A DNA stretch of 64,000 bases from the IMG/VR virus record IMGVR_UViG_3300018080_008436, positions 1 to 64,000 of that record; one strand, written 5' to 3'. The notes under the pieces are model-generated. The model searched no databases and had not been told where the DNA came from. It saw only the letters and a list, made by a program, of their open reading frames with translations. The translations under genes were made by a program, and so were the position numbers. Positions 1,511 through 41,533 of the stretch are shown piece after piece (position 1 is the stretch's first letter; each line of letters begins with the position of its first letter).

Positions 1511-1944
1511 TTTAACCCCTTACATGTATACTATTGAGCGTTGCGATTTCACAAGCGAAAATCTTGTGTGGTGTGAAAAAATTTAGGGAACCCTTATTTT
1601 CCTGTGTGAAAAAATTTAGGGAACCCTTATCACCCTGATAGGGTTCAAGGTGGAACCCTTATCGAAGACAAAGAGCTTCACTTTGCCTCAAGGACAAAGA
1701 GCTTCGCAATCTAGTTTTAGGGCACCCCCTACACCTGAAAAAGGTCAAATATTCGGAGGGGGGTGGGGGTACGTTTTCCCATATATAGAACATGCGTTTT
1801 TATATAAAAAATAAAAACAGTAGTACTCTTTTCATAATGCCTGCCGCTGTCCACCTGATTCTGGCAAAAGAAAAACCCCGCCTATCTCTAAGCGGGGTCA
1901 AGTTATTATTAAGTTTGGGATATAGAATCAGGTTAGTTCATACT

Positions 1945-3116: not shown

Positions 3117-3349
3117 AGTGTTATCTCCTTTGTTTACTATAACATAGCATACCGAGAGAATAAGTCAAGCTGTCCAGGTGCTTTTCTTTCTTTCGAAAAG
3201 AGTACTACTAAAGTGGTTCAGATCAAGATCTTGATCGATGATCAAAATCAGCAGTATTCTTTTCGGAAATGACAGAAGCCAGAAAAAGGCCCTCAACCGA
3301 AGTCAAGGGCCATTGCGCAATCCCCTCTGGATTTGGGACCTAAATTGTC

Positions 3350-3511: not shown

Positions 3512-3535
3512 GGGTATCTCCTTCCGAAAAGAGTA

Positions 3536-3937
3536 CTACTGTTGTGAGTCTTCCCATTCGCGCCATTTTTTGAGGTACTCGCCAGTTTCGGCTCGAATCT
3601 CTTCGACCGTAATGTCGTACCCTTGCAAGGCGTTTACGGTATCCGTAATGTCAAGGGTAATACAAAACTCATGATTCGCCAGTTCTCGATGAATGATAGC
3701 CTTCTTGCCGTTCTCTTCCATGTCCTGAGCGATACCCGCTTTGTGGATCTTTTCCAATCCTTCAAAGAGTTGATCGGCGTTTTCCTTGGGGCAGAAAAGG
3801 CCGTTAATCATCCGAACATAGGTAACGCCCTCTTTTTGTCCTTCGTTGAATTGCTTAATGTTAAAGGCAAAGAACGCACCCATTTCCTTAAGAAGCTTCG
3901 ACTGGGGTTCTTCGATGTACTGGCTAAGATACTTCAT
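3536..3937 (-). CDS. hypothetical phage protein
   Basis: SD AGGAG; stop codon lies inside a repeat arm. Confidence 0.8.
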   Translation of the reverse strand: MKYLSQYIEEPQSKLLKEMGAFFAFNIKQFNEGQKEGVTYVRMINGLFCPKENADQLFEGLEKIHKAGIAQDMEENGKKAIIHRELANHEFCITLDITDTVNALQGYDITVEEIRAETGEYLKKWREWEDSQQ

Positions 3938-3986
3938 CGTTTTCTCCTTTTGAAAAGAGTACTACTGTTGTGAGTTTTTCCATGTT

Positions 3987-4148: not shown

Positions 4149-4359
4149 TGTCTTATCTCCTTTGTCTACTTCTAACATAGCTCAAGATAGTGAAAAGTCA
4201 AACCGGTCTCCCGAGTTTTTTCATCTTTCAAAAAGAGTACTACTGTTTCACTTCAGCAGTACTCTTTTCAGAAGGAGGAGAGGGGGAGGGGGGGCAATAA
4301 AAAACCCCCTGCTCAGAAGAACAGGGGGCGGGCTTGGGGGACGCTTGGCGCGTCTTGGG

Positions 4360-4875: not shown

Positions 4876-5223
4876 TGTTGTTACCCTTTGTTTTGTTGTT
4901 CCCTTGGTAGCCCTTTTGCTGATACCCCTACAGTAGCATCTCTAAAGAGGAAGTCAAGCGCAGTTGTGCGATTTTTTTATTTTCAAAAACAATACTCCTG
5001 TTTCTGTTCAGCAGTACTCTTTTTGAAAACCAGGTGGTTTTCCGCCAGAAAAAAATCGAGAAAAAATTCGAAAAAAATCGGAAATTCTGTCACAGCCGTT
5101 CTGGAGTTATTTCTAAAAAGAGTACTACTGTTTCACTTCAGCAGTAGTCTTTTTGGAATAGCCTCCAGATACCACAAAAAAAGCCCCCGTCCGAAGACGA
5201 GGGCCAGGGCCAGGGGCCAGGGG

Positions 5224-5382: not shown

Positions 5383-5838
5383 GTTTCTGCTCCCTTGATT
5401 TGTTAGACTGTACTGATAAGATAGCATCTCTGCCTGGGATGTCAAGTCAGATTTCCAAGTAAAATTTTTTGTACTAGCATAAGAAATCTTATGGCTTCGA
5501 GCTACCCCCGCATCCCTTTCAAAAACAGTACTCCTGATTTGATTGAGCAGTACTCTTTTTGTAAGCCAGGTTCAGGCGGAAGGCGATCTGCGGGACAGAA
5601 AAAAGCAAAAAAATCGGAAATCCCTGTCACAGCCGTTCTGGGGCTATTTCTAAAAAGAGTACTACTGTTTCACTTCAGCAGTAGTCTTTTTGTAATCCAG
5701 GTGCTGGAAGGCGAGGGCTTCGGTCAAAGTCATCTGGGAACAAAAAAAGCCCTCGACCAAACGGGGCCGAGGGCTTGACGACGAGGGGAGAATAACCTCG
5801 TCAGCAGAACGGAAGTAGAGAAGAAATGAACAAAGACC

Positions 5839-6120
5839 CTACTTCCGTTTGGAGTCAGCTTTAGGAGGCTTCTGGGGCAACGGAAGCCGAACGGAACATG
5901 CAAGAGCATTAAATGCTTCTCGCGCCGTAAGAGGCTTCATAGGGGTTACAGGAGCGTTGACATAATTTGTTGTTGCTCGTTGATAGAGATTAGTATGCAT
6001 GAGAAGGGGTTCGTTGACATGGTCTTGCCAGTTTGTCATTTCTTGGATCTCCTTGGTTACTGGTCCTACTATGACATAGGTTTGGAAGATGTCAAATCGA
6101 TCTGGGAGATTTTTCTTCAT
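5839..6120 (-). CDS. hypothetical protein (no clear SD; abuts 38-bp site)
   Basis: ORF followed by terminator. Confidence 0.35.
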   Translation of the reverse strand: MKKNLPDRFDIFQTYVIVGPVTKEIQEMTNWQDHVNEPLLMHTNLYQRATTNYVNAPVTPMKPLTAREAFNALACSVRLPLPQKPPKADSKRK

Positions 6121-6496
6121 TTAAAAAGAGTACTCCTAATTTTATTCAGCAGTACTCTTTTTGAAAGCCAGATGCGGGGAAGCCAGATCCGCCAGATTCA
6201 GATGAGGCTGATCTTTCTGTCATGCGCATACATCATTCAGTGGGTAGAGGCGATCCAGGATCGAGTAAGTGTTTTCAAAAAGAGTACTTCTGTTTTAATT
6301 GAGTAGTACTCTTATTGTACGAACTCGCTATCCAGATAGGCTGACCTTCATAAGATTTCTTATATAAATACAAAAATATTTGTCTTTTGCTGTCACGCCT
6401 TCCAGCGGCTCATTTCTAAAAAGAATACTACTGTTTTGATTCAGCAGTACTCTTTTTGGAATCCAGGTGGCACTCGAAGGCTTCGCGGGAACACTA

Positions 6497-7438: not shown

Positions 7439-7675
7439 TGTAGTATCTCCCTTTTTGATTACTTCAACATAGCACAGGTTTTGATGTTGTCAAGTTGAGT
7501 TCTTAGATTTTCTTCACATATGCAGGCGCATTCAGTGGGTAGGTGATGTGCATTCAGTGGGTAGTTCTAGAAAGAGTACTACTAATTTGATTGAGTAGTA
7601 GTCTTTTTGGAAGAGCCTCCAGACACCACAAAAAAAGCCCTCATCCGAAGACGAGGGCGTTAGAGGATTGGTTGT

Positions 7676-7825: not shown

Positions 7826-7851
7826 TGTGATCTCCTGCGCTTTTAAAAAGA

Positions 7852-8277
7852 CTACTCCTGTTTTTGTTTTGGTTTCTTGGCCCACTCGCCAAACTTAGGG
7901 TAATTGATCTTTGGCACTTCTCCATGCCACTCGATTGTTTTGATTCCGTCTTTGAGTTTATAGAACTCTCCAACTATAAAAGGAAATTGAAAATGTTCTT
8001 CATCTCCTTTTTTGCAATATCCTTGATGATGAGGAAGCCACACTAAACGATCTTCCTCAACGGAGTTGAATGCCCATGGTCCAGTATCAGTGACATAGGA
8101 CAACAAGGCTTGTACTCCTTCACCGACAAAGCCCAACATCCCATCTTCATTCCGAACAAGATAATAGTCTTTGATTCGGAATTGATCGTGAGAACATTGC
8201 ACAGGACAAAGAAGTTTCTTTCCAAAGTATTTGTCTGGGAAAGTTTTCTTATAATAACAATGTTTTCGGACTATCAT
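7852..8277 (-). CDS. hypothetical protein
   Basis: ATGA overlap; stop inside repeat arm. Confidence 0.7.
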   Translation of the reverse strand: MIVRKHCYYKKTFPDKYFGKKLLCPVQCSHDQFRIKDYYLVRNEDGMLGFVGEGVQALLSYVTDTGPWAFNSVEEDRLVWLPHHQGYCKKGDEEHFQFPFIVGEFYKLKDGIKTIEWHGEVPKINYPKFGEWAKKPKQKQE

Positions 8278-8687: not shown

Positions 8688-8712
8688 CTTCTTCTCCCTT
8701 TCAAAAAGAGTA

Positions 8713-8946
8713 CTACTGATCTTTTGAGACTTTGACTGTTGTTGTAATTCCCGCCAACGCTCCACATGCTATGAGACCGAAGAGGATGTATTGAGAAAGT
8801 TGATCGGCAGAGATAAGAATTGCTTTAGCTATCTCGTCTTCATAGTTGACAGCTTGTTCAGTCAATGACGGATCAGAATCTCCACAGCCAGTCAAGATTC
8901 CCGCAAAGATAATTACAGCCAGGATGATAATCATATAGCGTTTCAT
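8713..8946 (-). CDS. putative membrane lipoprotein
   Basis: Hydrophobic signal with LTGC lipobox and C-terminal TM segment. Confidence 0.6.
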   Translation of the reverse strand: MKRYMIIILAVIIFAGILTGCGDSDPSLTEQAVNYEDEIAKAILISADQLSQYILFGLIACGALAGITTTVKVSKDQ

Positions 8947-9599
8947 TGTCTTTCTTCCTCTTGTTACTATCAACATAGCATAGATATGGTTGATGTCAAT
9001 CCTATTTAGAAAAAATAAATGAGATCGAGGAGGGTCTCCAGGATCGAGGAGGTATTTCTAAAAAGAGTACTACTGTTTTAATTCTGTAGTACTCTTTTTG
9101 AAAATCCTGGTGTGTATAATCACACTTCTTCACACCTCAAAATCAGGCTTATTATAATAGAATATAATATTATAATACAGAGAGATGAGCTTGATCTTAT
9201 ATAAAAAATAGAAAGAGAGTATATAGAAAGGTATCAAAACAATGGTATCAACACATTAGACACGTAAAGATACACGTGAAGATACACGTGGGCTATTATA
9301 CCAGCACGGGGTTTTCTAAAAAGAGTACTTCTGTTTTGATTGAGTAGTACTCTTTTTGAAAGGTCTGCTGGAACTCGAAGGCGCTTGGCGGGAATGAGAA
9401 ATAAAAAAGCCCTCTCGCAGATTGAGAGGGCTTTGCGCAGAGGAGGGAGGGGCCTCTGCATTGTGGAAAATTGAGGGCCTAAGGTCGGGCCTCAGGAGGG
9501 AGAGCGACCTCCCTAACTTTTCTTGCTAGTCGCTATTGCAATTCAGTCACCTCATTGATTGTTAAATACCTGCGTCCAGCTTCCCTCGGATCAGGAATT

Positions 9600-10055: not shown

Positions 10056-10282
10056 TTAAGATCTCCCATCTTGTTTATAGCATCAACATAGCATCTCTTG
10101 ATTCGATGTCAAATCGTTTTGTATGGAAATCTTCTCTTTTCTTGAGAACTTATGCATATACATGCCTGGGGGTATAGGCATTCAGTGGGTAGCCTGGGTG
10201 TATTCAGTGGGTAGTTTCAAAAAGAGTACTACTAATTTGATTGAGCAGTGGTCTTTTTGGAATGGGAGATCGAGACACTAGA

Positions 10283-10477: not shown

Positions 10478-10669
10478 GATACTTTCTCCGTTTGTTCTAC
10501 TTCTATCTTAACTCGTTACCAACTGTTGTCAACCTTATTCGCAAAAATACTGAAGAAAAAATGATGAGTTCCATCGGAAATCCAGGAGTGTCTGGATCTG
10601 GTATTATTTTCAAAAAGAGTACTACTGTTTTATTTCAGCAGTACTCTTTTCAGAAATAGACCTGGTGGT

Positions 10670-11678: not shown

Positions 11679-11901
11679 GCTACCACTATAACTTATCTAA
11701 ATAAGATGTCAAGTCGATTTACAAAAAATAAATGCGCATACTATGCGCAGGCATTCAGTGCGTAGCCTGGGTGCATTCAGTGGGTAGTTCTAGAAAGAGT
11801 ACTTCTGTTTTGATTGAGTAGTACTCTTATTGAAAGGAGAGAAGGCACTAAAAAACCCCAGCCATCTCTGACTGGGGTTGATCCTCACACGGTAGAGTGG
11901 T

Positions 11902-13831: not shown

Positions 13832-14101
13832 ATCAAATCTCCTGTTTGTTCCTGTTTCAGTTTATAAGTCACAATAGCATCTCTATTGGGGATGTCAAGC
13901 GCATTTAGAAAAAATAAATCCAGCTTGATGAACCTGGCTTCCCTGGGCCTGAACTAGTGTTTCAAAAAGAGTACTCCTGTTTTTATTCAGGAGTACTCTT
14001 TTTAGAAGATGGTCCAGAGGTCCCAGGTCCTGGCTTTCTGGGCACTAAAAAACCCCCCGCCTCGAAAGGCAGGGGGCTTGACTGGGATCTCCTATCGGAG
14101 A

Positions 14102-15025: not shown

Positions 15026-15473
15026 TTTGAAATGCTCCTTTGTTTGAGTTGGCTTTGAGGATTGTCCTCGATCTACCAGTTACGTTAGCATGTCTTTCGA
15101 TGTTGTCAAGTGCAATTTCGAGATTTTGTCAGCTTTTTTCGATCCTCCATTTTGTTCTCGGTTGTGCAGGTTCTTTGTTATCATGCGACTACTATGGCAC
15201 TCGAAACGGTACTTGTCAAGTGCGGTTCTCAAAAAAAGTTGAACTTTCTCATTTCAGGCACCCATTTCCCTATATACCTTATAATATACTGGCGATATGT
15301 GAGTCGAATTCGAAGACCTGGAAGACCTGGGACGGTGGCTTCTGGAGACCCTGAAAACCACTTTTCAAAAAGAGTACTACTGTTCTGATTCAGTAGTATT
15401 GTTTTTAGAAGGGGAAAAGGCACCAGGATACTTTGCGATACAAAGTACTTGGGATCTAAAACAGGTGGGGACT

Positions 15474-16191: not shown

Positions 16192-16511
16192 GATCCTCTC
16201 CTTTTGTTCTTTATATACCATAACATCATATGTATGTATTTCAAGTTGACTTAGTAAAATAACTTCCCAGGTGTCTGCCTTCCTGGAAGCATTTCTGAAA
16301 AGAGTACTTCTGTTTTTATTCAGTAGTACTCTTTTTAGAAGTAGCTGGCACCGGCGGCTGGTCCGCCAGGGCTATGAACTCATTGGGGAAAAAAGGAAAG
16401 CCCCTACCCAATTAAGGATAGAGGCTTTAACGACCCTGCCAAGGTTGAGATCGCAGGGGCCTGCGTAGGCAGGCATTCAAGGACGCGCATTCAGTGGATG
16501 CGCTCAGGCAT

Positions 16512-19088: not shown

Positions 19089-19356
19089 GGTACTGCTCCC
19101 TTGTTTATATAGTCACCTTAGCATATGTTAAATATATGTCAAGCCCATTTACAAAAAATAATTCAGACATCGATCAAAATCTCCTGAACAGCTCCTGGAC
19201 AGCGGCTCATCTTTCAAAAAGAGTACTACTGTTTTTATTCAGTAGTACTCTTTTTAGAAGTAGCTGGCACCCGGCGGCAGGCGGCGGGGCCTGAAAACAA
19301 AAAACCCCTGGCATTTCTACCAGGGGTTCTTCGGTATGGCTCGTTGCTTCGTTCGG

Positions 19357-21993: not shown

Positions 21994-22211
21994 TCTCTCT
22001 CCTCCTTAGTCGCCCCCTACTGAGCAATCGGTAGGGGGTTTTCTTTTGCCTGGACCTTTCCTGGACAGCGGCTCGCCTTTCAAAAAGAGTACTACTGTTT
22101 TAATTCTGTAGTACTCTTTTTAGAAGAGATAGGGCACACCAGGCTACCCATCAGGGCACAAAAAAAGCCCCTACCGAAGTAGGGGCCAGGGAATAAACAC
22201 GAGGAGATGGT

Positions 22212-25590: not shown

Positions 25591-25868
25591 TGTTATGCTC
25601 CAGTATCTTTACTAATCAACATAACCCCCATTAACATTAAGTCAAGGCCATTTACAAAAAATAATAACCCGCTGTCGATCCAGGAGCCGCCGCCATCTTC
25701 TAAAAAGAGTACTACTGTTTTTATTCTGTAGTACTCTTTTTGAAAATCAGGACCCCAGCCGCCACACCAGCAGACCCTGATCGGACCTGAACAACAAAAA
25801 AGACCCCTACCAATTAAGGTAGAGGCCCATATGCCTATATGTACGAGATAAGCAACTATATTATACAA

Positions 25869-28082: not shown

Positions 28083-28112
28083 CGCCGCCTCCTAGTCCTT
28101 TCAAAAAGAGTA

Positions 28113-28589
28113 CTACTGATCCTCTTCAGGATCTTCGGGATTCAAATGCTTGAACTCCTCAACCATATCCCGTTTCCAGAGCAATTCAACATCATGAACC
28201 TTACCATCATTCATGTTAATCTGAATATAGTTGGGAAAGATCTTGAGATCCTGAATATCAAACTTGCAGATCTCAAACTCTTCGTCACAAGAGGAAATGA
28301 CCAAATCATCTCGAATGATCTCCCCCTCAGTAACATCAACAAACAAAGACATACCATCGGCAATGATAGCTTCACAATCCCGAACCATATCAAAGAACAA
28401 ATCGATATGTTTATTATATCGATGCTCGATCTCAGTGGTATACTGGACATCATCAGCCTTTACGTCTGAGAAATTTGTATTGGCCGCTTTGAACTCTGCC
28501 TTTGATCGAGCATCCTCATCACTATCAGCTTCAACATCGACAATGATGGTCTTGGCTTCGATTCGACTAACTCTAACTCGGAAATTCAT
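28113..28589 (-). CDS. hypothetical protein
   Basis: Stop inside repeat arm. Confidence 0.7.
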   Translation of the reverse strand: MNFRVRVSRIEAKTIIVDVEADSDEDARSKAEFKAANTNFSDVKADDVQYTTEIEHRYNKHIDLFFDMVRDCEAIIADGMSLFVDVTEGEIIRDDLVISSCDEEFEICKFDIQDLKIFPNYIQINMNDGKVHDVELLWKRDMVEEFKHLNPEDPEEDQ

Positions 28590-30117: not shown

Positions 30118-30602
30118 ACTAAATCCTCTGTTTAGGGTTTGCGATCTCAACAGCAACAACATAGCATCCCAATACCAGGCTGTCAAACCCATTTAGCAAA
30201 AATAATTCGAGTTTCTATTTTTACGGTCTCAAATTATTATAAGCGGTTAAACTATTAAAAGACCCCTTCGGGGCTTTTTATAGTTTACTTTTTTACTTTT
30301 TAAAAAGAGTACTACAGAATAGAAACAGGAGTACTCTTTTTGAAAATAGGAGTATCAGCCGCCAGGTCCTGGATCGAGTTCATTGCCTGAATCGCCTGGT
30401 TCGACAGCCGCCCACACCAGGCTTCTTTCAAAAAGAGTACTACAGAATTAAAACAGAAGTACTCTTTTTAAAAGGTCTGCTGGAGACCAGGCTAAAAGGT
30501 TTGCTGAAGACCATGATGGGCTGTTTATATACTACGTATATAAAAAAAATGGCTCAGGAACAAAATCCCAAGCCATTTGAATTGTTTAGAATGTATGTGA
30601 AA

Positions 30603-33655: not shown

Positions 33656-33941
33656 TTATATATCCATCCTTATTTAGGTATTCTTTGATAGTGTGTGGGT
33701 CCATGCCCATATTTCTCATTTCTATGGCGGCTCTTAGTGCTTTTCTTTTTATTTCTATCAATGCCTCTGAGTATGTGACGATATAGTATCCTCTATGTGG
33801 GTATAGGAATCTACACATTTCTACGTAGTCTTTAGCTTCTTGTTCATTTGTCCAGACGCTTGATATAGCATCTTGTCCTGCTCCTTCGTGGCATTTGACG
33901 ATATATGTTTTTTGGCATTCTAGTGTAATAGTTTTAATCAT
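33648..33941 (-). CDS. MIKPIILD-family paralog
   Basis: MIKTITLE..YIV..SSVWTNEQEA. Confidence 0.8.
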   Translation of the reverse strand: MIKTITLECQKTYIVKCHEGAGQDAISSVWTNEQEAKDYVEMCRFLYPHRGYYIVTYSEALIEIKRKALRAAIEMRNMGMDPHTIKEYLNKDGYIIG

Positions 33942-33964
33942 TGATTATCTCATTCTTCGAATGG

Positions 33965-34435
33965 TTATCTCATTCTTCTATATACAACGCCTTCGTAAGT
34001 TATACAGTCGTCAGTTGGTCCTGTTGGTGTTGAACCAACTGGTTCAGTTGGTGTTGAACCAACAGGACTAGTTGGATCTGAAGAATATGGATGGTCTGCT
34101 GGAAGCACTAGGATATCATCTCTTGGTACAACTGTTTGTTCAGCCATATCTCTTTCATTAACTCTAATGAGTTCTTCTACAGCTTCAGCCACTCTTTGAC
34201 TATCCAATGGTACTTGTGTAACATAGTATCGTTCTGAATTATTGTATCGTTCTGAATTATTACGAGGGCTAAGTTGTTCTCTGATGTTGAGTGTCATAGC
34301 TTGTTTTGTTGCCATATGTCTTTCTGACCATACGCTTATAACTCTTACTCTTCCATCGCTTGTTTCTGCGAGGACGCTATAGGCGACTTCGTCTCTTTCA
34401 TTTGGCATTGTATCTAATATGATTGGTTTAATCAT
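33965..34435 (-). CDS. MIKPIILD-family paralog
   Basis: MIKPIILD..ISVWSE. Confidence 0.8.
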   Translation of the reverse strand: MIKPIILDTMPNERDEVAYSVLAETSDGRVRVISVWSERHMATKQAMTLNIREQLSPRNNSERYNNSERYYVTQVPLDSQRVAEAVEELIRVNERDMAEQTVVPRDDILVLPADHPYSSDPTSPVGSTPTEPVGSTPTGPTDDCITYEGVVYRRMR

Positions 34436-34668
34436 GACCTTTCTGGAGTTGGGCTATATGATTGTAATAATGAGATTCTTCTTTCTCGAATGTTCAATGT
34501 GTATCCACTAACCTGATGGAGAGTGTATAGGCTTTTAATTCTTTCGTATTCTCTGGAGGCTTCTTTTCGGTCATTATACACAGCATATGGACTTTCATTT
34601 ACCATAATGAGGTATACTTTTTGTGAGCTTCCTTTTTCTTGACAGTCTAGTGTTAAGGGTTTAATCAT
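34432..34668 (-). CDS. MIKPIILD-family paralog
   Basis: MIKPLTLDCQ..VYLI. Confidence 0.75.
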   Translation of the reverse strand: MIKPLTLDCQEKGSSQKVYLIMVNESPYAVYNDRKEASREYERIKSLYTLHQVSGYTLNIRERRISLLQSYSPTPERS

Positions 34669-34715
34669 ATGCCTGTTGCGTTATATGGACTTTCATTTAT
34701 TATAATGAGGTATAC

Positions 34716-35366
34716 TTAGTACATCTTGATTTGGCCGTTGTCTGCAAACTTACGAACCTCGCAAAGTTTGACATCGCGCACAAAAACCTCTAGCCAGCAG
34801 TCGCCTGTTTCGTCGTAAGCACACTCGACGCGCAATCCGAACACCTCATGTGCTAGTTTGGTCTCACTAACCAATCGGTCCACGCTGACTTCATTTGCTT
34901 CGTTTGCTTCGCTCATTTGCGGGTTACCTCCTTGTTTAGCTATGTGGTCTGTCCACCGCTTTGCCATCCTCCACGCCAGCGCGACTTGCCAGCACTGGGG
35001 AAACTCGATGTTGTCGGGGACAAAACCCTCTGGCCAAAATCCATACTTTTCCAGGTTCGCCCATGCTTGGATGTGCTCAACGTCTGTCTCGTCAAACCAA
35101 TCCAAGATGCTAACCACTAGTTTCTGCTGATTCGCTTCGCTCATTTGCAGGTTACCTCCTTGTTTATCTTTGATGGTATTGTATTTTTCTTTAAGCTCTT
35201 TGTATTCTTTTTTGAGCTTATTGAGTTCTTCTTGTTGTTCGATGAGTTTCTTTTTCATCTCTCTAGGAGTGCCATAGAGTTTACATGTACTGCACATTCC
35301 TGAGACATCTCCCCATGATGCTCCATACATTTGTCCGCAGTAATCGCATTTAGTAGGTGTAGACAT
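34716..35366 (-). CDS. mosaic hypothetical protein with internal SD-ATG repeats
   Basis: KQGGN(L/P)QMSEAN twice. Confidence 0.55.
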   Translation of the reverse strand: MSTPTKCDYCGQMYGASWGDVSGMCSTCKLYGTPREMKKKLIEQQEELNKLKKEYKELKEKYNTIKDKQGGNLQMSEANQQKLVVSILDWFDETDVEHIQAWANLEKYGFWPEGFVPDNIEFPQCWQVALAWRMAKRWTDHIAKQGGNPQMSEANEANEVSVDRLVSETKLAHEVFGLRVECAYDETGDCWLEVFVRDVKLCEVRKFADNGQIKMY

Positions 35367-35411
35367 AATTTTCCTCTTATTAACCTAATTTATTAACCCT
35401 ACGGGTTAATA

Positions 35412-35900
35412 TTATTCTCTTGAGCAATTAAAGCATGGACTTGGTGTTCCTTCATGGTCGAATGTAAGGTTTTTATATATGTTGGCATCTCCAGGAATAC
35501 CTGAGACTATTCCTTCTTGATGTGGGCATTCATTTTCTGTAGCGTATCTACATACAGTTAGTGAGTCGAAGCTTTGTATGTTTAACAGTCTTGATGCTTG
35601 TTTTCTTTCTTGTGCATCTACTTTTGCTTCTTCTGGCGACATTGTTCTTAGTTCTAATACCCTCATCCCTTGTGCTGTCATATTTTGTTCAGCGAGTTCT
35701 ATACCTTTGAGTATTAATTGTGGGTTAATAACTCTTTTTGTGTAATTTGGTCTGAAGTTTTCTGAGACATGGTTGATAGCTCTGATATGTCTTTGGGCAT
35801 CTTCTTCAGTATTCCAGACGACTTCGATACCGTTTCGATCTTTAACGATATAGACGTAGTTGCCATCTTCCTGGTTATCTAATGTGATATGTTTAATCAT
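35412..35900 (-). CDS. MIKPIILD-family paralog
   Basis: MIKHITLDNQ..VYIV..VVWNTEEDA. Confidence 0.8.
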   Translation of the reverse strand: MIKHITLDNQEDGNYVYIVKDRNGIEVVWNTEEDAQRHIRAINHVSENFRPNYTKRVINPQLILKGIELAEQNMTAQGMRVLELRTMSPEEAKVDAQERKQASRLLNIQSFDSLTVCRYATENECPHQEGIVSGIPGDANIYKNLTFDHEGTPSPCFNCSRE

Positions 35901-36121
35901 AGTTCTTCTGGGGTTACTCCCCCATATATAGGTTCGTTTGTTTTTAGTTTCATGTAGAAGCACTTTCCTGCTTGATCTTGTGTGAGTGTTGATCGTTCTT
36001 TTCGAACTTGAAGTATGGCATCTTCTCTTTCGCCCCATATTCCTAATATGATATCTTGATATTTGACAACATAAACAACTTTCTTATCTTCCTGACCATC
36101 TAATGTGATAGGTTTAATCAT
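35897..36121 (-). CDS. MIKPIILD-family paralog
   Basis: MIKPITLDGQ..GIWGEREDA. Confidence 0.8.
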   Translation of the reverse strand: MIKPITLDGQEDKKVVYVVKYQDIILGIWGEREDAILQVRKERSTLTQDQAGKCFYMKLKTNEPIYGGVTPEEL

Positions 36122-36420
36122 TATTGTGTCTCTTCTGAGGCTTCGTTCAGTCTTTGTATTCGTTCAATTCTTTCTCTTTTTTCTTGACTATTGATAGGTG
36201 TTGCTTTAACATGGTAGTATCTTTTTAGCATAGGGAATCTATACATAAGATATTCCAGGTGTTCTTCTGCGAGTTCTTCAGTATCCCATATTCCAATGAC
36301 CACATCGACCACATCATAAATGATTTCATCTTCTATTACATCCACTGTTACGACTCTATGCTGATATACTATGTATACCATTCTTTCTTCATGTTGCTGT
36401 AGGACGACAGGTTTAATCAT
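36121..36420 (-). CDS. MIKPIILD-family paralog
   Basis: MIKPVVLQQ..GIWDTEELA. Confidence 0.8.
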   Translation of the reverse strand: MIKPVVLQQHEERMVYIVYQHRVVTVDVIEDEIIYDVVDVVIGIWDTEELAEEHLEYLMYRFPMLKRYYHVKATPINSQEKRERIERIQRLNEASEETQ

Positions 36421-36637
36421 TGTTTTCCCATTCATGGATTTCTTTGATCCATGCTTCGTCATTGACCATCCTTTTGGAATACCAGTAATCGTCTGGTGGA
36501 TTTGAGTTAGTTTTTCTCAAATACTCTACGTGTTTTTTGGCTTTTTCTTCTTTATCCCATGCGCCGAGTATGAATGACCTTCTATGTACGATGAAGATAT
36601 TTCCTTCTTGGTGATCTAATAAGATTGTTTTAATCAT
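36413..36637 (-). CDS. MIKPIILD-family paralog
   Basis: MIKTILLDHQ..GAWDKEEKA. Confidence 0.8.
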   Translation of the reverse strand: MIKTILLDHQEGNIFIVHRRSFILGAWDKEEKAKKHVEYLRKTNSNPPDDYWYSKRMVNDEAWIKEIHEWENND

Positions 36638-36873
36638 TGGGTCTGTTTCAATGTGTTTTTAATCAATTTAGATATGAGTGTATTATCTAATGTTCTTCTT
36701 ACCACTTCCATTGGTATTTTTGATCCTGCGAGACTGCATGCTTTTACATAATCTTTTGCCTGTTCTTCATTAGACCACACTGTATCAATTTTCATTGTAT
36801 CCATATTCTGTACGAGATATATGTCTGAATCTCTTGTATTCAGTTGGTGATCAAATATGATTTTTCTAATCAT
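36634..36873 (-). CDS. MIKPIILD-family paralog
   Basis: MIRKIIFDHQ..TVWSNEEQA. Confidence 0.8.
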   Translation of the reverse strand: MIRKIIFDHQLNTRDSDIYLVQNMDTMKIDTVWSNEEQAKDYVKACSLAGSKIPMEVVRRTLDNTLISKLIKNTLKQTQ

Positions 36874-36880
36874 TGGATTC

Positions 36881-37294
36881 TTATACTTCTTCCATTATTC
36901 CGACAAATTCTTGTCGAATTTCTTCTTCAACTCTGATTCTTTCTCTAAGATGTCTATGTAGTGATCTTGATCTATCGTCCCTCTGTATCGCTGTAATAAT
37001 AGGTCTATCTATGCCGTATGCATCAGAGTTTGGATCTTGATGTTGCAATAATCTAATTGATCCATCGCTTCTTCTTTCGAGTGTTCCATTCTCGAATCTT
37101 TCTTGTATAACCCAATTACCATCTGAATGTCTTACAGAGATTTGGCGTCCTTCTTCATTGAAATCGAACAATGAATCACCAAGTTTTTCAGTATAATGGG
37201 TTGTTTCTTTGATAAACTTGAAACCCTTCCATTTTGAAAGGTCATCTGTTTCAGGTGCTTCAGGTGTTGTATCTAATATGATAGGTTTAATCAT
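36881..37294 (-). CDS. MIKPIILD leader fused to unrelated body
   Basis: MIKPIILDTTP, no SVW domain. Confidence 0.75.
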   Translation of the reverse strand: MIKPIILDTTPEAPETDDLSKWKGFKFIKETTHYTEKLGDSLFDFNEEGRQISVRHSDGNWVIQERFENGTLERRSDGSIRLLQHQDPNSDAYGIDRPIITAIQRDDRSRSLHRHLRERIRVEEEIRQEFVGIMEEV

Positions 37295-37634
37295 TTTGGT
37301 AAACCCTTATATTTTCTCGATATTGTTCGCAATTAATATGGCAGTATCTTGAGCCTGTTCTTTCGCAGTTGACACATGGTAGTTGTGATATATTATCTTC
37401 AGCTTGCAAACTTTCTTGAGCTTTTATTGCTATCAGCAACAAATTAGAATCAAGGGTAGTTCGAGTATACATTGCCTGTCTCTGGGGATTGAGTTTATTT
37501 ATTGCCGCAACATGTCTATCAGCATCTTCTCGTCTCATCCATACGCCATCTATGACTCTATGTTTTGTATGAACGACGTATACGCTGACATTCTTGCCTT
37601 CTGGCTGGTTATTTAATATGATTGTTTTAATCAT
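37287..37634 (-). CDS. MIKPIILD-family paralog, Cys tail
   Basis: MIKTIILNNQ..GVWMRREDA. Confidence 0.8.
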   Translation of the reverse strand: MIKTIILNNQPEGKNVSVYVVHTKHRVIDGVWMRREDADRHVAAINKLNPQRQAMYTRTTLDSNLLLIAIKAQESLQAEDNISQLPCVNCERTGSRYCHINCEQYRENIRVYQND

Positions 37635-38038
37635 CTTTCTTGACACCTTTCGCATTGGCAATCAGTATTCAGTTCTGGTGCTACTTTTTGGTCATTGTAT
37701 TGACATCTATAGCAATCAGTTGCTTCGAAGCAATCTTGAGGGTATTGACAACCATGTTTCTTTGAGTATTCGCAGATACCTCTAAGGTCTTTTTGATTGA
37801 GGATTTCTTGTGATTGATTTTTCAATGCCTGTTCATCGATTGATCTCATAACAGTATATAGTGTTATTCCTGGGACATCTATTTGGGATGATTTTACATA
37901 GAGTTCCGCATCTTCTTTTCTTGTCCAGACGGATAACATCTCATCAACTCTTTGACCGTTGTATCTTTGTGTTACTTTCATAACAATATAGATACATTCC
38001 AACCTTTCTTGTTGGTTGAGTATGAGTGTTTTAATCAT
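37631..38038 (-). CDS. MIKPIILD-family paralog, Cys tail
   Basis: MIKTLILNQQ..SVWTRKEDA. Confidence 0.8.
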   Translation of the reverse strand: MIKTLILNQQERLECIYIVMKVTQRYNGQRVDEMLSVWTRKEDAELYVKSSQIDVPGITLYTVMRSIDEQALKNQSQEILNQKDLRGICEYSKKHGCQYPQDCFEATDCYRCQYNDQKVAPELNTDCQCERCQER

Positions 38039-38214
38039 TGCTCACCATTTCTATCTGTATAGATTGGTCCGCATGGTCCTCCGAAGTCTGTTTCAGAGCT
38101 ACCGTCTTCATATTCGGTTTGTTCATATGGGGCATCTTGCCAAGTGCCTTTAGTCTTTTTGACCTTGACCCTTTTGCCATCTTTCCATTCGTATGTCCAT
38201 TCTTCTTCTTTCAT
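38035..38214 (-). CDS. 59-aa hypothetical protein (not in ORF track)
   Basis: ATGA overlaps at both ends. Confidence 0.6.
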   Translation of the reverse strand: MKEEEWTYEWKDGKRVKVKKTKGTWQDAPYEQTEYEDGSSETDFGGPCGPIYTDRNGEQ

Positions 38215-38306
38215 CTGTTACCTGGAATTAGTTTTCCGCATTTTGGACATATAAGTGACCAAGCTGGAATTTTCTTCTTACAATGTGGACATCTTTCTTT
38301 TTTCAT
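38211..38306 (-). CDS. 31-aa zinc-ribbon peptide (not in ORF track)
   Basis: CPHC...CPKCG; ATGA overlaps. Confidence 0.6.
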   Translation of the reverse strand: MKKERCPHCKKKIPAWSLICPKCGKLIPGNR

Positions 38307-38602
38307 TTATCCCATCCCATTAAGTATCTTGCTACTTTGTGTTCTACCTTTCTTTGTTCTTTCTCTGCGAGTTGTTGTGTTATGAGACCGTTGACATGTT
38401 CCCTCATATGTGGAGGATTCATAACTCTTTCGCAGTAATATACCTCTCGTCTTCCCTGCCATGTATATGCCTCTACTTGTTGTTTAGCATCATGTTTATT
38501 ATCCCATACCGAGATGATTTCATCACCTTGAAAGACGATGTAGACCATAACTCCATCACTTGACTGTCCATCTAAAGTAATTTGTTTGACATCTGTTTTC
38601 AC
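38303..38602 (-). CDS. MIKPIILD-family paralog
   Basis: VKQITLDGQ..ISVWDNKHDA. Confidence 0.8.
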   Translation of the reverse strand: MKTDVKQITLDGQSSDGVMVYIVFQGDEIISVWDNKHDAKQQVEAYTWQGRREVYYCERVMNPPHMREHVNGLITQQLAEKEQRKVEHKVARYLMGWDK

Positions 38603-39282
38603 ATGATACCTTCGTTGACAAACGGTTTAATGATATCTGCTTTTTTCAGTTCTTCCTCATGCTCATCGTGGCATTTATCTGAGCAGAACCAGAGCCAAAT
38701 TCTTTCTCTTGGACTTTCTTTTATATGTGTAAATGTACTAGCAGTCTTTCTGGAGTTTACATCTTTCATTTCTTTGCATTGGCATCGGTAGCATACAAGT
38801 TCGGGCAATTTGTCGAGTGTATCAAGTGTTTCTTGTCTATAGATCTCAGATATCCTTATCGCTTCATCGTATTCTTTTGCAACAGCTAGAATCTCATAGG
38901 GAACCCACTTTATATCTGGATCATGTCTTCCTCTAAACATCCATATTCCATCAATTATCCTTAAAATTGCTCTTGCGTATATATGATTAAACCATCCAGT
39001 ATGATTGTCATAAACATGGTCTTCTTCATCAATAACAGATCTTTCGACTTCGACTACATCACCAGTAGTTAAGTTCATCATCACTTCATATCCGACAATA
39101 ACTGGTCTGTTGTTGATTTTTTTCTTTACAATAACTGCATTTGGATATGAAATTTTTAATTTCTCCAACATTTCTTCAGCCACATGTATTTGAGACCATA
39201 CCGAATGTGGACATGTATATTCGGGGCCTTCCCATAGTTCGTAAACAACATTTTGGTTTTCTAATATAATTGGCTTAACCAT
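38599..39282 (-). CDS. MIKPIILD-family paralog with C-terminal FCS/TRASH-like Zn finger
   Basis: MVKPIILE..HSVW; CYRC..WFCSDKC. Confidence 0.8.
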   Translation of the reverse strand: MVKPIILENQNVVYELWEGPEYTCPHSVWSQIHVAEEMLEKLKISYPNAVIVKKKINNRPVIVGYEVMMNLTTGDVVEVERSVIDEEDHVYDNHTGWFNHIYARAILRIIDGIWMFRGRHDPDIKWVPYEILAVAKEYDEAIRISEIYRQETLDTLDKLPELVCYRCQCKEMKDVNSRKTASTFTHIKESPRERIWLWFCSDKCHDEHEEELKKADIIKPFVNEGIM

Positions 39283-39824
39283 CAGAATGGAATCTCTATG
39301 TTTATCCAATCATTATTGGACTCAGTTACTGTTTCATTAGTGTCTACGTAAGGTTCTTCCTCTTTCGATTCTTGAAACTCTTCAGGGTGAGTATATTTTC
39401 TTACCATATTTTTTCTTGCCATCAGATGACCATATTTGTAGCAGAACTCCGTCATTGAGATTTCCAAATCAACTGACAGGATGAGGTGACATCTTACATG
39501 ACTTCCGTTAGATAGTTTGTAATCAACATCTATCATAACATATTGATTGTCATCTGGGAACCTATTTGACACAGCTAAGTGTCTACAGGATTGAGGGATG
39601 ATCATGTATTCTACAGGGAACGATCCCTCTTGTAGATCTTGTTTTGTATAGAGGAATGACTCATTCATACACCATGGTCTTCCTATTTTTGGAAGGATGT
39701 AGTGTCTGAGTTGTTTGTCAAAACATCTGACAATCAGATCCAGGGAATCTTCATGAAACCCTAAGACCTTTTCCAAAGTATCAAAGTGTTTATCTTGAAA
39801 TGGTAATGTAACAGTGTTTTTCAT
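39282..39824 (-). CDS. hypothetical protein (divergent leader)
   Basis: ORF in array. Confidence 0.7.
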   Translation of the reverse strand: MKNTVTLPFQDKHFDTLEKVLGFHEDSLDLIVRCFDKQLRHYILPKIGRPWCMNESFLYTKQDLQEGSFPVEYMIIPQSCRHLAVSNRFPDDNQYVMIDVDYKLSNGSHVRCHLILSVDLEISMTEFCYKYGHLMARKNMVRKYTHPEEFQESKEEEPYVDTNETVTESNNDWINIEIPF

Positions 39825-40249
39825 TATCTTAGGTTCACATCGCAGGGGACGTATCTATCTTTAAAAACTCTCAATGTTAATCGGTTTTCTACTTTGAAGA
39901 TGAATGAAGTTGTTAGTCCCTGGTAATTTACTTCAAACAGGGAGTATCCTTCGACAGTCATCCCATTCTCTCTTCTTGCTCCAGTAGGCGTTTGGGTCAT
40001 TTCTTCCCTGATTTTATATTTTTGGGTTGAGACATATAAATAGTTAGAATCTACATATGCCACATATTCTCTTCCATGACACCAGATTTCATCTTCAAAA
40101 ATCTTTATTCTTGGCAATCCTGAACTTGGGATTCTGAACTTTGATATCACCAATTGTTGAAAGAACAAATAGTTTTCCAAGGCATCACCCAATTCGATTT
40201 GAGTTGGCCTTCTTTTTGGTGTACTGCTCAATATAATTGGCTTAATCAT
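39824..40249 (-). CDS. MIKPIILS leader fused to unrelated body
   Basis: MIKPIILSSTP. Confidence 0.75.
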   Translation of the reverse strand: MIKPIILSSTPKRRPTQIELGDALENYLFFQQLVISKFRIPSSGLPRIKIFEDEIWCHGREYVAYVDSNYLYVSTQKYKIREEMTQTPTGARRENGMTVEGYSLFEVNYQGLTTSFIFKVENRLTLRVFKDRYVPCDVNLR

Positions 40250-40641
40250 CCTTGAAGATTTACCAAGTTATATTTATCTTTATATTCTTCTGGATTCATC
40301 CGCTTGTTGATTGGACCAACAAAAGTTCTCAATGCTTGTTGATAATTAACTGATCCAAAAGACATGTCGCAGATGAAGTACCCATGTCTTTGCATCCTGT
40401 TTCTTTGATCTCTGATCCTGCCATAATACGATCCTGTTCTTGATCTTGCATCAGCCCAGTGAATTCCACTCCCATATATTGTCCAATCAGAAACAGGCAT
40501 CAACATACAATATTTGAATCTTCTTCCGAAGCATTCTTCTAATGCCATTGATGTTCTGTTGTGAACTTTCAGAGTTTTTTCAATCTGAGTGAAATCTGGT
40601 ATAAACTCATTCATACTTTCTAATGTGATTATTTTAATCAT
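40246..40641 (-). CDS. MIKIITLE leader fused to unrelated body
   Basis: MIKIITLES. Confidence 0.75.
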   Translation of the reverse strand: MIKIITLESMNEFIPDFTQIEKTLKVHNRTSMALEECFGRRFKYCMLMPVSDWTIYGSGIHWADARSRTGSYYGRIRDQRNRMQRHGYFICDMSFGSVNYQQALRTFVGPINKRMNPEEYKDKYNLVNLQG

Positions 40642-41533
40642 CGGATTCTTCTCTTTGGATTTCTTGCCATGTGAGATCTTCCATGACTGTTCTGAATGTT
40701 TCCATCATCTCCCTGTCCAATTCATATTTGATTTGATCAGAGCTAGACTGTTGATCGAAATTCATCAGATATGGGGAATAATCTACGTGGTTAATATTGA
40801 TATTCATTTTGCTAAATCTTTTAATGTCATTGTAGATCTTATCATATCTTGACTGATATTCTTGATCTTTTTTCTTTGATTTAGCTCGTCTCACTTTCTC
40901 TTGATATCGTCTAAAGCATTCATCAGAGCAGAACCAGACATATTGTTCTTTGTCGGGTGATTCAAGAGTATAAATATATGCCTCTGGTCTCTCATATTTC
41001 TTTATGTCTTTGTACTCATTGGCCTTACAGTTTTTACACTCAAGTTCTGGAAGGTTTTCCAGTTCTTCGATCTGAGCAGGGATTAAAGCTCTAGCTTCTT
41101 CTATAGCTCTGTCAGCATCGACATGGATGTAGGATATCATACAATCAATCCATCCTTTTGAAAAAGCACTGGCATTAGCTCTACATTTCCAATCTCCATC
41201 TTTTTTATAGTAATTGGCTTTGGGGAAGTTTGAAGGGATGTTTAAAGCCGCTCTGTATGACATCTCCACTGTTTCCAGTTCTGGATCATAAACAATTGCT
41301 CTGGTTTCCTCAACTTCTCCAGAAAGTTTCACCCAAACTTTGTAGGCAATAACAACAGGATTGTTATTCGCTTCTTCTTCGAGGATATAAGCATCTGGTT
41401 TAGCTATAAGAAGTCTTTCCAGGTTCTCTTCTGCCAAATTTTTACTTGTCCAGATTGAGTGAATTACTCTTCCTCCTGATGAAAGAAGCTTATAGATTTT
41501 ATTATGTTCATCAAGTGTGATTGTTTTGATCAT
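40634..41533 (-). CDS. MIKPIILD-family paralog with FCS-like Zn finger
   Basis: MIKTITLDE..IHSIWTS; CKNC..WFCSDEC. Confidence 0.8.
   Translation of the reverse strand: MIKTITLDEHNKIYKLLSSGGRVIHSIWTSKNLAEENLERLLIAKPDAYILEEEANNNPVVIAYKVWVKLSGEVEETRAIVYDPELETVEMSYRAALNIPSNFPKANYYKKDGDWKCRANASAFSKGWIDCMISYIHVDADRAIEEARALIPAQIEELENLPELECKNCKANEYKDIKKYERPEAYIYTLESPDKEQYVWFCSDECFRRYQEKVRRAKSKKKDQEYQSRYDKIYNDIKRFSKMNININHVDYSPYLMNFDQQSSSDQIKYELDREMMETFRTVMEDLTWQEIQREESDD

What the first reader, a model, noticed from the sequence alone, without database searches (positions are those of the whole stretch)
30303..30468. Terminal copies of the element are inverted, and paired sites are about 130 bp apart
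Seen: the 20 internal sites have T-rich spacers on the plus strand, whereas the last two (AATAGAAA, AATTAAAA) and the first partial site (AATAAAAA before 1818) are A-rich. 30431 is nearly the reverse complement of 9061/22083. Gene-free pairs are spaced 130 (4986/5116), 131 (5522/5653), 128 (30303/30431) and 258 bp (9061/9319). Inference: the element has functional polarity and marks region boundaries; direct sites would excise and opposed sites would invert.
Basis: partly seen in the sequence, partly recalled or inferred. Interest (0 to 1): 0.6.

Follow-up and report, generated by a model that had tools for sequence, protein, structure and literature searches.

The report
Repeated hairpin punctuating phage early genes
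A 48-base palindrome repeated 22 times sits at the junctions between small early-gene cassettes of a phage of about 524 kb, much like the promoter/stem-loop modules of T4-like phages. The two flipped end copies are a peculiarity of this strain, not a conserved boundary signal.

Summary
There are 22 full copies of a 48-nt near-perfect palindrome (arms AAAAAGAGTACT / AGTACTCTTTTT, 8-nt loop) between window 4226 and 30473, and none elsewhere in the 476-kb record. Twenty have the A-rich loop on the coding (minus) strand. The last two, plus a half copy at 1810-1832, are flipped.

The element lies between a G+C-rich intrinsic terminator and a strong sigma-70-type promoter, at the boundaries of ORFan cassettes in the phage's early, gene-variable region. 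This resembles the PeSL modules (promoter-early stem-loops) of T4-like phages.

Two syntenic relatives carry diverged versions at the same positions. Both arms have changed together (11 of 21 pairs), and all their copies are sense-oriented, including those at the place where this phage has its flipped pair. So polarity relative to transcription is real, but the terminal inversion is specific to this lineage, most simply a flip through the palindromic arms.

The "130 bp" spacing is not a fixed period: it is 128-154 nt here and 58-148 nt in the relatives.

I found no recombinase, and independent assemblies are collinear. Reads could not be examined. This is a new variant of a known kind, of moderate interest.

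The parts
30298..30345 (+). Full hairpin copy, flipped (A-rich loop on the plus strand). First of the terminal pair in the finding.
   Evidence: 70.1 bits on plus
30426..30473 (+). Full hairpin copy, flipped. Second of the terminal pair; near reverse complement of 9056-9103.
   Evidence: I11, 96%; 73.1 bits on plus
30346..30425 (.). 80-nt CCWGG-rich spacer between the two flipped copies, with no gene. Its orientation is undetermined.
30547..30578 (-). G+C-rich intrinsic terminator of the upstream operon (DUF6557 gene and 145-aa gene), 74 nt before the hairpin pair on the coding strand.
30262..30274 (.). Short G+C-rich hairpin with T runs on both strands (bidirectional terminator-like), between the pair and the GP88 promoter.
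30158..30186 (-). Sigma-70-type promoter (TTGACA, 17 nt, TG-TATGTT) of the GP88-like gene. First promoter of the early cluster.
25698..25745 (-). Full copy, sense. Terminator 25801-25828 upstream, promoter 25618-25645 downstream. Positional counterpart of the copies after the Metallophos gene in both relatives.
22078..22125 (-). Full copy, sense. Terminator 22166-22187 upstream; no promoter before the next SD/ATG.
19212..19259 (-). Full copy, sense. Terminator upstream, UP element and promoter 19115-19142 downstream.
16293..16340 (-). Full copy, sense. Terminator 16397-16428, promoter 16217-16244.
15363..15410 (-). Full copy, sense; one arm carries 2 uncompensated changes.
13960..14007 (-). 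Full copy, sense, perfect 20-bp stem. Terminator 14052-14070, promoter 13871-13898.
11788..11835 (-). Full copy, sense. Terminator 11854-11879, promoter 11685-11712.
10608..10655 (-). Full copy, sense. Terminator 10746-10777, promoter 10505-10532.
10215..10262 (-). Full copy, sense, decayed arm. Promoter 10085-10112.
9314..9361 (-). Full copy, sense. Terminator 9406-9434 upstream.
9056..9103 (-). Full copy, sense. Promoter 8972-8999 downstream.
7565..7612 (-). Full copy, sense. Terminator 7637-7658, promoter 7466-7493.
6414..6461 (-). Full copy, sense. First of three gene-free tandem copies (spacings 141 and 154 nt).
6273..6320 (-). Full copy, sense.
6119..6166 (-). Full copy, sense. Promoter 6068-6095 lies 24 nt downstream.
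5648..5695 (-). Full copy, sense. Pair with 5517-5564 (131 nt); terminator 5747-5776.
5517..5564 (-). Full copy, sense. Promoter 5418-5445.
5111..5158 (-). Full copy, sense. Pair with 4981-5028 (130 nt), a paralogue of the 5517/5648 pair.
4981..5028 (-). Full copy, sense, decayed arm.
4226..4273 (-). Full copy, sense. Terminator 4304-4329, promoter 4174-4201.
3190..3270 (.). Degenerate copy with about 30 nt inserted in the loop, between terminator 3288-3311 and promoter 3141-3168. Orientation ambiguous.
1810..1832 (+). Half copy (A-rich loop plus 3' arm on the plus strand, so flipped), just beyond the last terminator 1874-1899 of the region.
3526..3541 (-). Lone 3' arm, sense, directly upstream of an SD and ATG inside an operon.
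   Evidence: (D15)
3952..3967 (-). Lone 3' arm, sense, directly upstream of the SD and ATG of the DUF7659 gene.
   Evidence: (D15)
7845..7860 (-). Lone 3' arm, sense, degenerate.
8703..8718 (-). Lone 3' arm, sense. The stop codon of the upstream ORF lies inside it, and the next SD follows.
28103..28118 (-). Lone 3' arm, sense, same gene-junction layout. A lone arm lies at about the corresponding place in relative L136 (3341).

Best explanation
The element is the conserved stem-loop of a composite cassette-junction module in the early, gene-variable region of a huge phage. Read on the coding strand, the module runs: gene(s), G+C-rich intrinsic terminator, A+T-rich 48-nt palindrome with A5/T5 tracts, spacer, UP element, strong sigma-70-type promoter, SD, next gene(s). 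I take it to work like the PeSL modules (promoter-early stem-loops) of T4-like phages in two ways. It would be a second, bidirectional transcription stop that insulates neighbouring, strongly transcribed cassettes. It would also be the shared stretch of homology through which the phage's general recombination duplicates, deletes and swaps cassettes, and through which the copies keep each other alike (concerted evolution). The polarity (A-rich loop on the coding strand) is inherited and kept uniform by that homogenisation. The flipped copies at the two edges are local inversions through the element's own 12-16-nt inverted arms. They persist at the edges because edge copies are homogenised least. 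Shown here: the copies, their orientation, the terminator-hairpin-promoter layout, confinement to the early promoter cluster, conservation of position and palindromy in relatives, and sense orientation of the relatives' boundary copies. Inferred: termination, recombination, and the way the flip arose.
For: There are 22 copies against 0.28 expected, all between 4.2 and 30.5 kb of a 476-kb record. A G+C-rich terminator lies within about 100 nt upstream of 14 copies, and a sigma-70-type promoter within about 150 nt downstream of 14. Twelve of the 19 extended -10 promoters on the coding strand of the whole record lie at 2.5-30.2 kb. The genes in between are nearly all ORFans. Each copy has a stem of 11 bp or more followed by T5 on both strands, with folding energies of about -9 to -25 kcal/mol. 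Relatives L136 and L139 are collinear with window 32 to 19 kb but share only about 6-10 genes with it. Both have the same terminator-hairpin-promoter layout, with their own version of the palindrome at the same two anchor positions: before the GP88 gene and after the Metallophos gene. Copy number at those positions differs, 1 against 5 after Metallophos and 2 against about 1.5 to 3 before GP88, as expected of recombining repeats. Between the phages both arms changed together: 11 of 21 pairs, 91.5% of cells paired against 78.9% in shuffles (0 of 500 reached it). Within this genome there is no covariation and the arm mutations are uncompensated, which is the signature of concerted evolution. PeSLs are described as stem-loop terminators just upstream of early promoters, clustered in hyperplastic regions and mediating indels and mini-circles (PMC2839356, PMC4122927).
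Against: Most copies already have a canonical terminator just upstream, so a second stop is not obviously needed. The G+C-rich terminators all differ in sequence, whereas the A+T hairpins are nearly identical within a genome, which a mere terminator does not require and which would also fit recognition by a sequence-specific factor. At 22078-22125 no promoter follows before the next gene, so termination there cannot be complete. No rearrangement was seen among five or more assemblies, and no read-level evidence could be obtained. The covariation rests on only three lineages. My own-phage profile does not detect the relatives' copies, so homology rests on position, layout and a short shared core. 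This phage was not shown to be T4-like.
Confidence: 0.5

Rival explanations
1. The palindrome is the recognition site of a phage-encoded sequence-specific factor, either a dimeric DNA-binding regulator or a hairpin- or RNA-binding protein. This factor would switch the early cassettes off or on together, in the manner of operators or of the transcription-oriented 'stoperators' of cluster A mycobacteriophages. Site and protein would co-evolve, so each phage has its own version.
For: The arms are near-identical in all copies of one genome but different in each relative, with both half-sites changed together. By contrast the neighbouring G+C-rich terminators are all different. Lone arms are conserved in sense orientation at gene junctions. 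Orientation follows transcription in three phages. Position is conserved between the same genes.
Against: No candidate protein was found; the only HTH hint is sub-threshold. The distance from hairpin to promoter varies from about 24 to 144 nt, so the element is not a fixed part of the promoter. The half-site centres are 28 bp apart, which is not a whole number of helical turns. Concerted evolution by recombination explains the same pattern without a protein.
Confidence: 0.25
2. The copies are sites of a site-specific recombination system: direct copies excise cassettes and opposed copies invert them, and the inverted terminal copies delimit the recombining region.
For: The cassette-like layout with all internal copies direct, flipped copies at both edges, and gene-free 'empty' units. 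The edge position of the two flip events has about a 1 in 378 chance if flips fell at random among about 28 units (my arithmetic, post hoc).
Against: No tyrosine recombinase, serine recombinase or Y1 transposase in the 476-kb record. The cassettes have their own promoters and terminators, unlike integron cassettes. The boundary copies are sense-oriented in both relatives. The assemblies are collinear. The arms are themselves palindromic, so orientation is carried only by the central 16 nt.
Confidence: 0.05
3. The element is a selfish, non-autonomous palindromic repeat (REP- or MITE-like) that spread through intergenic DNA and is tolerated there, with no role for the phage.
For: High copy number, genome-specific sequence, intergenic location after gene ends, many decayed and half copies, and tandem gene-free units.
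Against: No Y1 transposase/RAYT. Confinement to 6% of the genome, although intergenic DNA exists elsewhere. Positional conservation between the same genes in phages whose flanking proteins are only 53-69% identical, with palindromy maintained. No target-site duplications were noticed.
Confidence: 0.1
4. The hairpin acts as RNA: a 16-20-bp duplex in read-through transcripts that is cut by host RNase III or another nuclease. Cutting would separate cassettes and set mRNA ends, like the conserved RNase III sites between T7 early genes.
For: Sense-strand polarity. A perfect stem of up to 20 bp with an 8-nt loop. G-U pairs on the sense strand in relative L136, whose three full copies fold better in sense than in antisense.
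Against: Most copies lie after a terminator and before the next promoter, so they would be transcribed only by read-through. The strand that folds better is mixed in this phage and is the antisense strand in L139. There is no within-genome covariation and no Rfam family match.
Confidence: 0.1

Closest known systems
PeSL (promoter-early stem-loop) cassettes of T4-like phages RB49/phi1, PST/T4 and nt-1/KVP40 (PMC2839356, PMC4122927)
   Same: A stem-loop with A and T tracts just upstream of an AT-rich region, a strong sigma-70-type early promoter, an SD and a start codon. They are repeated many times, clustered in hyperplastic regions full of ORFans, and show half or degraded copies near indels. 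The consensus is specific to each genome.
   Different: Here a separate, canonical G+C-rich terminator usually precedes the conserved hairpin. The hairpin is much longer (48 nt, 16-20 bp) and far more uniform. CCWGG-rich G+C-rich spacers flank it. The host genome is a phage of about 524 kb with no detectable near relative among deposited phages. Terminator activity and mini-circles were shown for PeSLs but not here.
Bidirectional intrinsic (rho-independent) terminators
   Same: A hairpin flanked by an A tract and a T tract, so that either strand gives a stem followed by a U run.
   Different: G+C-poor stem. The same sequence recurs at every site. It is often redundant with a canonical terminator 20-90 nt upstream.
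Stoperators of cluster A mycobacteriophages (from my own knowledge)
   Same: Many copies of one genome-specific site in short intergenic gaps, oriented with transcription, and differing between related phages.
   Different: Stoperators are 13-bp asymmetric sites spread over the whole genome and bound by the immunity repressor. Here the site is a 48-nt palindrome limited to the early region, and no binding protein is known.
Minute inversions of hairpin loops in non-coding chloroplast DNA (from my own knowledge)
   Same: A short loop flanked by inverted arms flips without other change. This gives copies that are reverse complements only in the centre, as the terminal copies here are with certainty.
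   Different: Different genome type. Here two adjacent copies are flipped, possibly together with the spacer between them.
Integron attC sites and REP/RAYT repeats
   Same: Imperfect palindromes in one orientation at the ends of gene cassettes (attC). Genome-specific intergenic palindromes in high copy number (REP).
   Different: No integrase or Y1 transposase was found. The cassettes have their own promoters. The stems are near-perfect, without the extrahelical bases of attC.

Membership tests
PeSL (promoter-early stem-loop module) | Stem-loop immediately upstream of an AT-rich region, a sigma-70-type early promoter, an SD and a start codon | tested here: met
   14 of 22 copies have such a promoter within about 150 nt downstream, and UP-like AT-rich elements precede several. 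The spacer is longer than in published PeSLs.
PeSL (promoter-early stem-loop module) | Clustered in a hyperplastic region of small ORFans that differs between close relatives | tested here: met
   All copies lie at 1.8-30.5 kb. The proteins there have almost no Pfam hits. The relatives share only a few anchor genes in a collinear frame.
PeSL (promoter-early stem-loop module) | The stem-loop is an effective transcription terminator | not testable with these tools
   The sequence is compatible: a stem of 11 bp or more plus T5 on both strands. There are no expression data.
PeSL (promoter-early stem-loop module) | Recombination between copies makes indels and mini-circles | tested here: inconclusive
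   Copy number and cassette content differ between relatives at conserved positions, and paralogous pair units exist. But all assemblies of this phage are collinear and reads were not available.
PeSL (promoter-early stem-loop module) | Host genome is a T4-like myovirus | not tested
   No match to deposited phages by DNA or by one protein. Two terminase Pfam models gave no hit. Taxonomy unknown.
Site-specific recombination sites (integron attC-like, invertase sites) | A cognate tyrosine or serine recombinase in the element or genome | tested here: not met
   PF00589 and PF00239 gave no match in the 476-kb record, while the controls matched. 48 kb of the original contig was not searchable.
Site-specific recombination sites (integron attC-like, invertase sites) | Promoterless cassettes, each ending in one site | tested here: not met
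   The cassettes carry their own promoters and terminators.
REP / RAYT repeats | An associated Y1 (IS200-like) transposase | tested here: not met
   PF01797 gave no match in the record.
Any curated RNA family (Rfam 15) | Match to a covariance model at or near the gathering score | tested here: not met
   Apart from the three tRNA genes, which are real matches but not the hairpin, only sub-threshold hits appeared; those on the hairpins are chance hits to long-hairpin miRNA precursor models.
Structured palindrome under selection (hairpin or dyad site) | Compensatory change of both arms across lineages | tested here: met
   11 of 21 pairs changed on both sides. The covariation score is 0.404 against 0.174 in shuffles (0 of 500 reached it), and slid controls give at most 0.10. 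Only three lineages are involved, and there is none within this genome.

The most novel reading that the evidence does not exclude
The palindrome is the target of an unrecognised, phage-encoded, sequence-specific machine that co-evolves with it. One possibility is a hairpin-recognising transcription factor or polymerase; hairpin promoters are known for the phage N4 virion RNA polymerase. Another is a recombinase of a new type that moves early-gene cassettes. In either case the sense polarity, the lone arms at gene junctions and the flipped edge copies would be functional signals of a cassette system special to huge phages.
Probability: 0.15. Interest if true: 0.75.

Novelty: new variant of a known kind. 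Interest (0 to 1): 0.4.

Why it matters
Huge phages carry large blocks of small genes of unknown function, and how those blocks are regulated and reshuffled is poorly understood. This region shows that the "punctuation" idea known from T4-like phages, a conserved stem-loop plus early promoter at each cassette junction, also applies in a phage of about 524 kb. The form here is more elaborate and unusually uniform. Its position and palindromy are kept in relatives while its sequence drifts in step on both arms. That gives a concrete element to test for termination, for recombination hot-spot activity and for a binding factor. It is also a practical marker for finding the early, fast-evolving region in related metagenomic phage genomes. 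The particular claim of inverted boundary copies and a 130-bp period does not appear to carry biological meaning.

Tried and rejected
1. Relatives by exact DNA pattern. IMG/VR gave no hits with the 20-base pattern, and only single chance hits with a 14-base pattern. JGI metagenomes gave only the same phage from two samples, plus unrelated single terminators.
2. Relatives by single proteins in IMG/VR or GenBank phages: none.
3. DUF7659 homologues led to unrelated phages of 50-60 kb. Close DnaE homologues sit on contigs too short to reach this region.
4. Extension of the hairpin by pairing of its flanks: a copy's own flanks pair no better than flanks of other copies.
5. Strand-specific RNA structure: the better-folding strand is mixed.
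6. Chi-like reading of the CTGG/CCAG-rich flanks: the asymmetry here is weak (p = 0.04), and opposite or mixed in the relatives. There is no unusual avoidance or excess of AGTACT or CCWGG in the rest of the genome.
7. Deciding whether the flanks or spacer of the flipped pair are inverted: the local matches (9-11 nt) are at the level of shuffled controls.
8. Coding reading of the hairpin: plus-strand ORFs run through copies, but they have poor codon scores and no start signals.
10. Searching the untrimmed metagenome contig: not held. The 6.5 kb beyond window position 1 has no copy.

Full report
WHAT THE WINDOW IS. The window is the first 64 kb of a 476,248-bp IMG/VR record classed as a provirus. 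That class is probably an artefact. The record is cut from a 524,692-bp metagenome contig, and an independent ENA assembly of 523,871 bp starts at a different point. Genes run on in the same direction across window position 1, and no integrase is present. Nearly all genes, and all long ORFs of the record, lie on the minus strand. I therefore call the minus strand "sense".

THE OBSERVATION. The pattern AGAGTACT-N16-AGTACTCT, with up to 3 mismatches, occurs 22 times against 0.28 expected. The full unit is a 48-nt near-perfect palindrome. Its outer arms are AAAAAGAGTACT and AGTACTCTTTTT, four further inner pairs are partly kept, the loop is 8 nt, and 3-4 more flanking pairs often add to it. All copies lie between 4226 and 30473. 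With one mismatch allowed there is none elsewhere in the 476 kb, and a profile search adds only one weak hit.

Twenty copies have the A-rich loop on the sense strand. The last two (30298-30345 and 30426-30473) have it on the plus strand. The copy at 30426 is 96% complementary to 9056-9103. A half copy, loop plus 3' arm, at 1810-1832 is also plus-oriented. Five lone 3' arms (3526, 3952, 7845, 8703, 28103) are sense-oriented and sit at gene junctions just before an SD. A degenerate copy at 3190-3270 has about 30 nt inserted in its loop, and its orientation is ambiguous. However, the 130 and 131 pairs are duplicates of each other, and 141- and 154-nt pairs exist as well.

ANATOMY. On the sense strand the usual order is as follows:
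- gene(s);
- a canonical G+C-rich terminator with a T run;
- 20-90 nt of G+C-rich spacer;
- the A+T-rich palindrome;
- 25-145 nt of spacer;
- an AT-rich UP-like element;
- TTGACA, 16-17 nt, then TG-n-TATGTT;
- SD and the next gene.

Fourteen copies have such a terminator upstream and fourteen have such a promoter downstream. The cluster of strong extended -10 promoters (12 of the 19 on the sense strand of the whole record) spans 2547-30186, which matches the stretch that holds the hairpins. The genes between are small and almost all lack Pfam matches; the exceptions are DUF7659, radical SAM, Metallophos and GP88. Three tRNA genes lie there too. G+C is 42-48% in this stretch against 36-40% in the rest of the window and about 36-42% over the rest of the record. 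The 70 nt on either side of the hairpins hold 41 of the record's 604 CCWGG sites in 0.6% of its length.

TESTS INSIDE THIS GENOME. The 22 copies show no covariation. The percentage paired, the compensatory changes and the covariation score do not exceed the shuffles, and mutated arms are uncompensated. Which strand folds better varies from copy to copy. A copy's flanks pair no better with each other than with flanks of other copies. So within the genome the copies look like one sequence kept alike or recently spread, with decay at some sites. No Rfam family matches. No tyrosine recombinase, serine recombinase or Y1 transposase is encoded in the record.

OTHER SAMPLES AND ASSEMBLIES. Exact-pattern scans of IMG/VR and of JGI metagenomes found arrays only in this same phage. 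The other hits are single, unrelated terminator-like hairpins. A 36.6-kb contig from a second sample and ENA and Logan contigs are collinear with the window. They differ by 0-2 SNPs plus one 9-nt in-frame indel, and all hairpins stand in the same order and orientation. There is thus no fixed rearrangement.

RELATIVES. Homologues of the GP88-like protein led to two metagenome contigs with the same gene order: DUF6557 gene, 145-aa gene, a 420-470-nt gap, GP88 gene, then the Metallophos gene and tRNA genes. At the DNA level L136 is collinear with window 32 to 20 kb. Only 6-10 genes per relative have a counterpart in the window, so this is a region of fast gene turnover.

Both relatives carry their own palindrome:
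- L136 has three full and six partial copies.
- L139 has three full copies and at least three partial ones.
- In both, the copies sit in the same terminator-hairpin-promoter layout with CTGG-rich spacers.
- In both, they sit at the same anchor positions as here: in the gap before GP88 and just after Metallophos.

The three versions share only an inner core (TACT-n-C ... AG-n-AGTA). The rest of both arms has changed in step. On an alignment of 8+3+3 copies, 11 of 21 pairs have changes on both sides. 91.5% of cells pair against 78.9 +/- 1.5% in shuffles, and the covariation score is 0.404 against 0.174; no shuffle in 500 reached either value. Slid controls give at most 0.10. This rests on three lineages, and my own-phage profile does not detect the relatives' copies. 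Homology is therefore inferred from position, layout and the shared core.

All copies in the relatives that can be oriented have the loop in the sense orientation. This includes the two or three copies in the gap before GP88, which is the exact counterpart of the flipped pair here.

WHAT THE FLIPPED COPIES ARE. What is inverted for certain is the central 16 nt between the 12-nt perfect arms. The two flipped copies belong to the same sub-type (inner arm ACAG) as 9056, 22078 and 25698. The arms of each copy, and the outer arms of two neighbouring copies, are inverted repeats of each other. Exchange between them therefore flips either one loop, or both loops together with the spacer. Short matches hint at the second: the outer flank resembles that of 9314 in direct order, and the spacer ends resemble flanks of 9056 and of L136 in inverted order. 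These matches are no better than shuffled controls, so the extent of the inversion is open.

Two flip events at the two extremes of about 28 units would have a chance of about 1 in 378 if flips fell at random (my arithmetic, post hoc). The simplest account is that interior copies are continually homogenised against their neighbours, while edge copies take less part. That is a general property of repeat families evolving in concert, and here it is an inference. Since the relatives do not share the flip, it is not a conserved boundary signal.

SPACING. Gene-free neighbours are 128-154 nt apart here. In L136 they are 66-148 nt apart by the repeat table (about 90 nt between the starts of the first two hairpins), and in L139 about 58-129 nt. 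The unit is roughly one hairpin plus its two spacers, that is, a junction with nothing in it. There is no fixed period.

EXPLANATION. I rank first (0.5) a PeSL-like junction module. The hairpin would be an extra, bidirectional stop and the shared homology for cassette gain, loss and homogenisation by the phage's general recombination (PMC2839356, PMC4122927). The main rival (0.25) is a co-evolving, sequence-specific binding factor. It is suggested by the contrast between identical A+T hairpins and diverse G+C-rich terminators, and by the conserved lone arms.

VERDICT. This is a new variant of a known kind. Interest is moderate (0.4).

Noticed in passing
window 1466, 1494, 15474, 31698, 31726, 31973; G000 463439-463530; L136 160-496; L139 254-617: A second palindrome, TTAGTAA-N3-TTACTAA, brackets the hairpin region and recurs 13 kb before the end of the record. 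It is conserved upstream of the DUF6557 gene in both relatives and looks like the operator of a conserved regulator.
   Followed up: partly
window 6234, 6762, 7529, 7551, 10179, 11752, 11774, 16488, 16509, 26852, 26918, 31673, 32321: The motif CATTCAGTG(G) (sense strand CCACTGAATG) occurs once or twice just downstream of several hairpins. It is conserved in L136, L139 and the more distant L138.
   Followed up: no
window 1-1750 (7, 724, 1444, 1584, 1617): Iteron-like repeats of TTTAGGGAACCC and other direct repeats lie in the gene-free stretch next to the low-coordinate end of the hairpin region. This may be an origin or a control region.
   Followed up: no
window position 1 (contig Ga0180433_10000003 position 48445): The 'provirus' trimming of the IMG/VR record looks artificial. 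Genes continue across the cut, a second assembly of about 524 kb starts elsewhere, and there is no integrase. The phage genome is probably about 524 kb and circular or circularly permuted.
   Followed up: partly
G000 125866-129225 (outside the window): A 1119-aa protein with a Cas12f1-like TNB domain, so a Cas12/TnpB-type nuclease candidate in a huge phage. An SbcC/Rad50-like protein lies at 173283-175850 and a DnaE-type polymerase at 184467-187397.
   Followed up: no
window 14102-15025, minus strand: A 307-aa protein with a long Lys/Glu/Ala-rich stretch and a tail of KKAPAKK repeats, reminiscent of histone H1-like DNA-binding tails, encoded among the early cassettes.
   Followed up: no
window 33909-42352: Eleven copies of a 28-35-nt motif that ends in the start of a minus-strand gene (ATGATTAAACC...). 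This suggests a family of paralogous small genes with conserved 5' ends just beyond the hairpin region (D6 and D12).
   Followed up: no
window 9104-9313: The 258-nt 'gene-free' interval between two hairpins has an extended -10 (TGGTATAAT) on the sense strand, followed by three direct repeats of ACGTGTATCTT. It could be a small RNA unit that ends at the next hairpin.
   Followed up: no
L138 7852-8415, 9408-9971, 10955-12086: A more distant relative has arrays of 66-bp tandem repeats, each with a GGAAAT-nn-ATTTCC palindrome, on both sides of its GP88 gene. This may be another form of repeated palindrome at the same kind of place.
   Followed up: no
window 13700-13880, minus strand: An unusually long leader of about 180 nt lies between promoter 13871-13898 and the start of gene 13300-13662. 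Its content was not examined.
   Followed up: no
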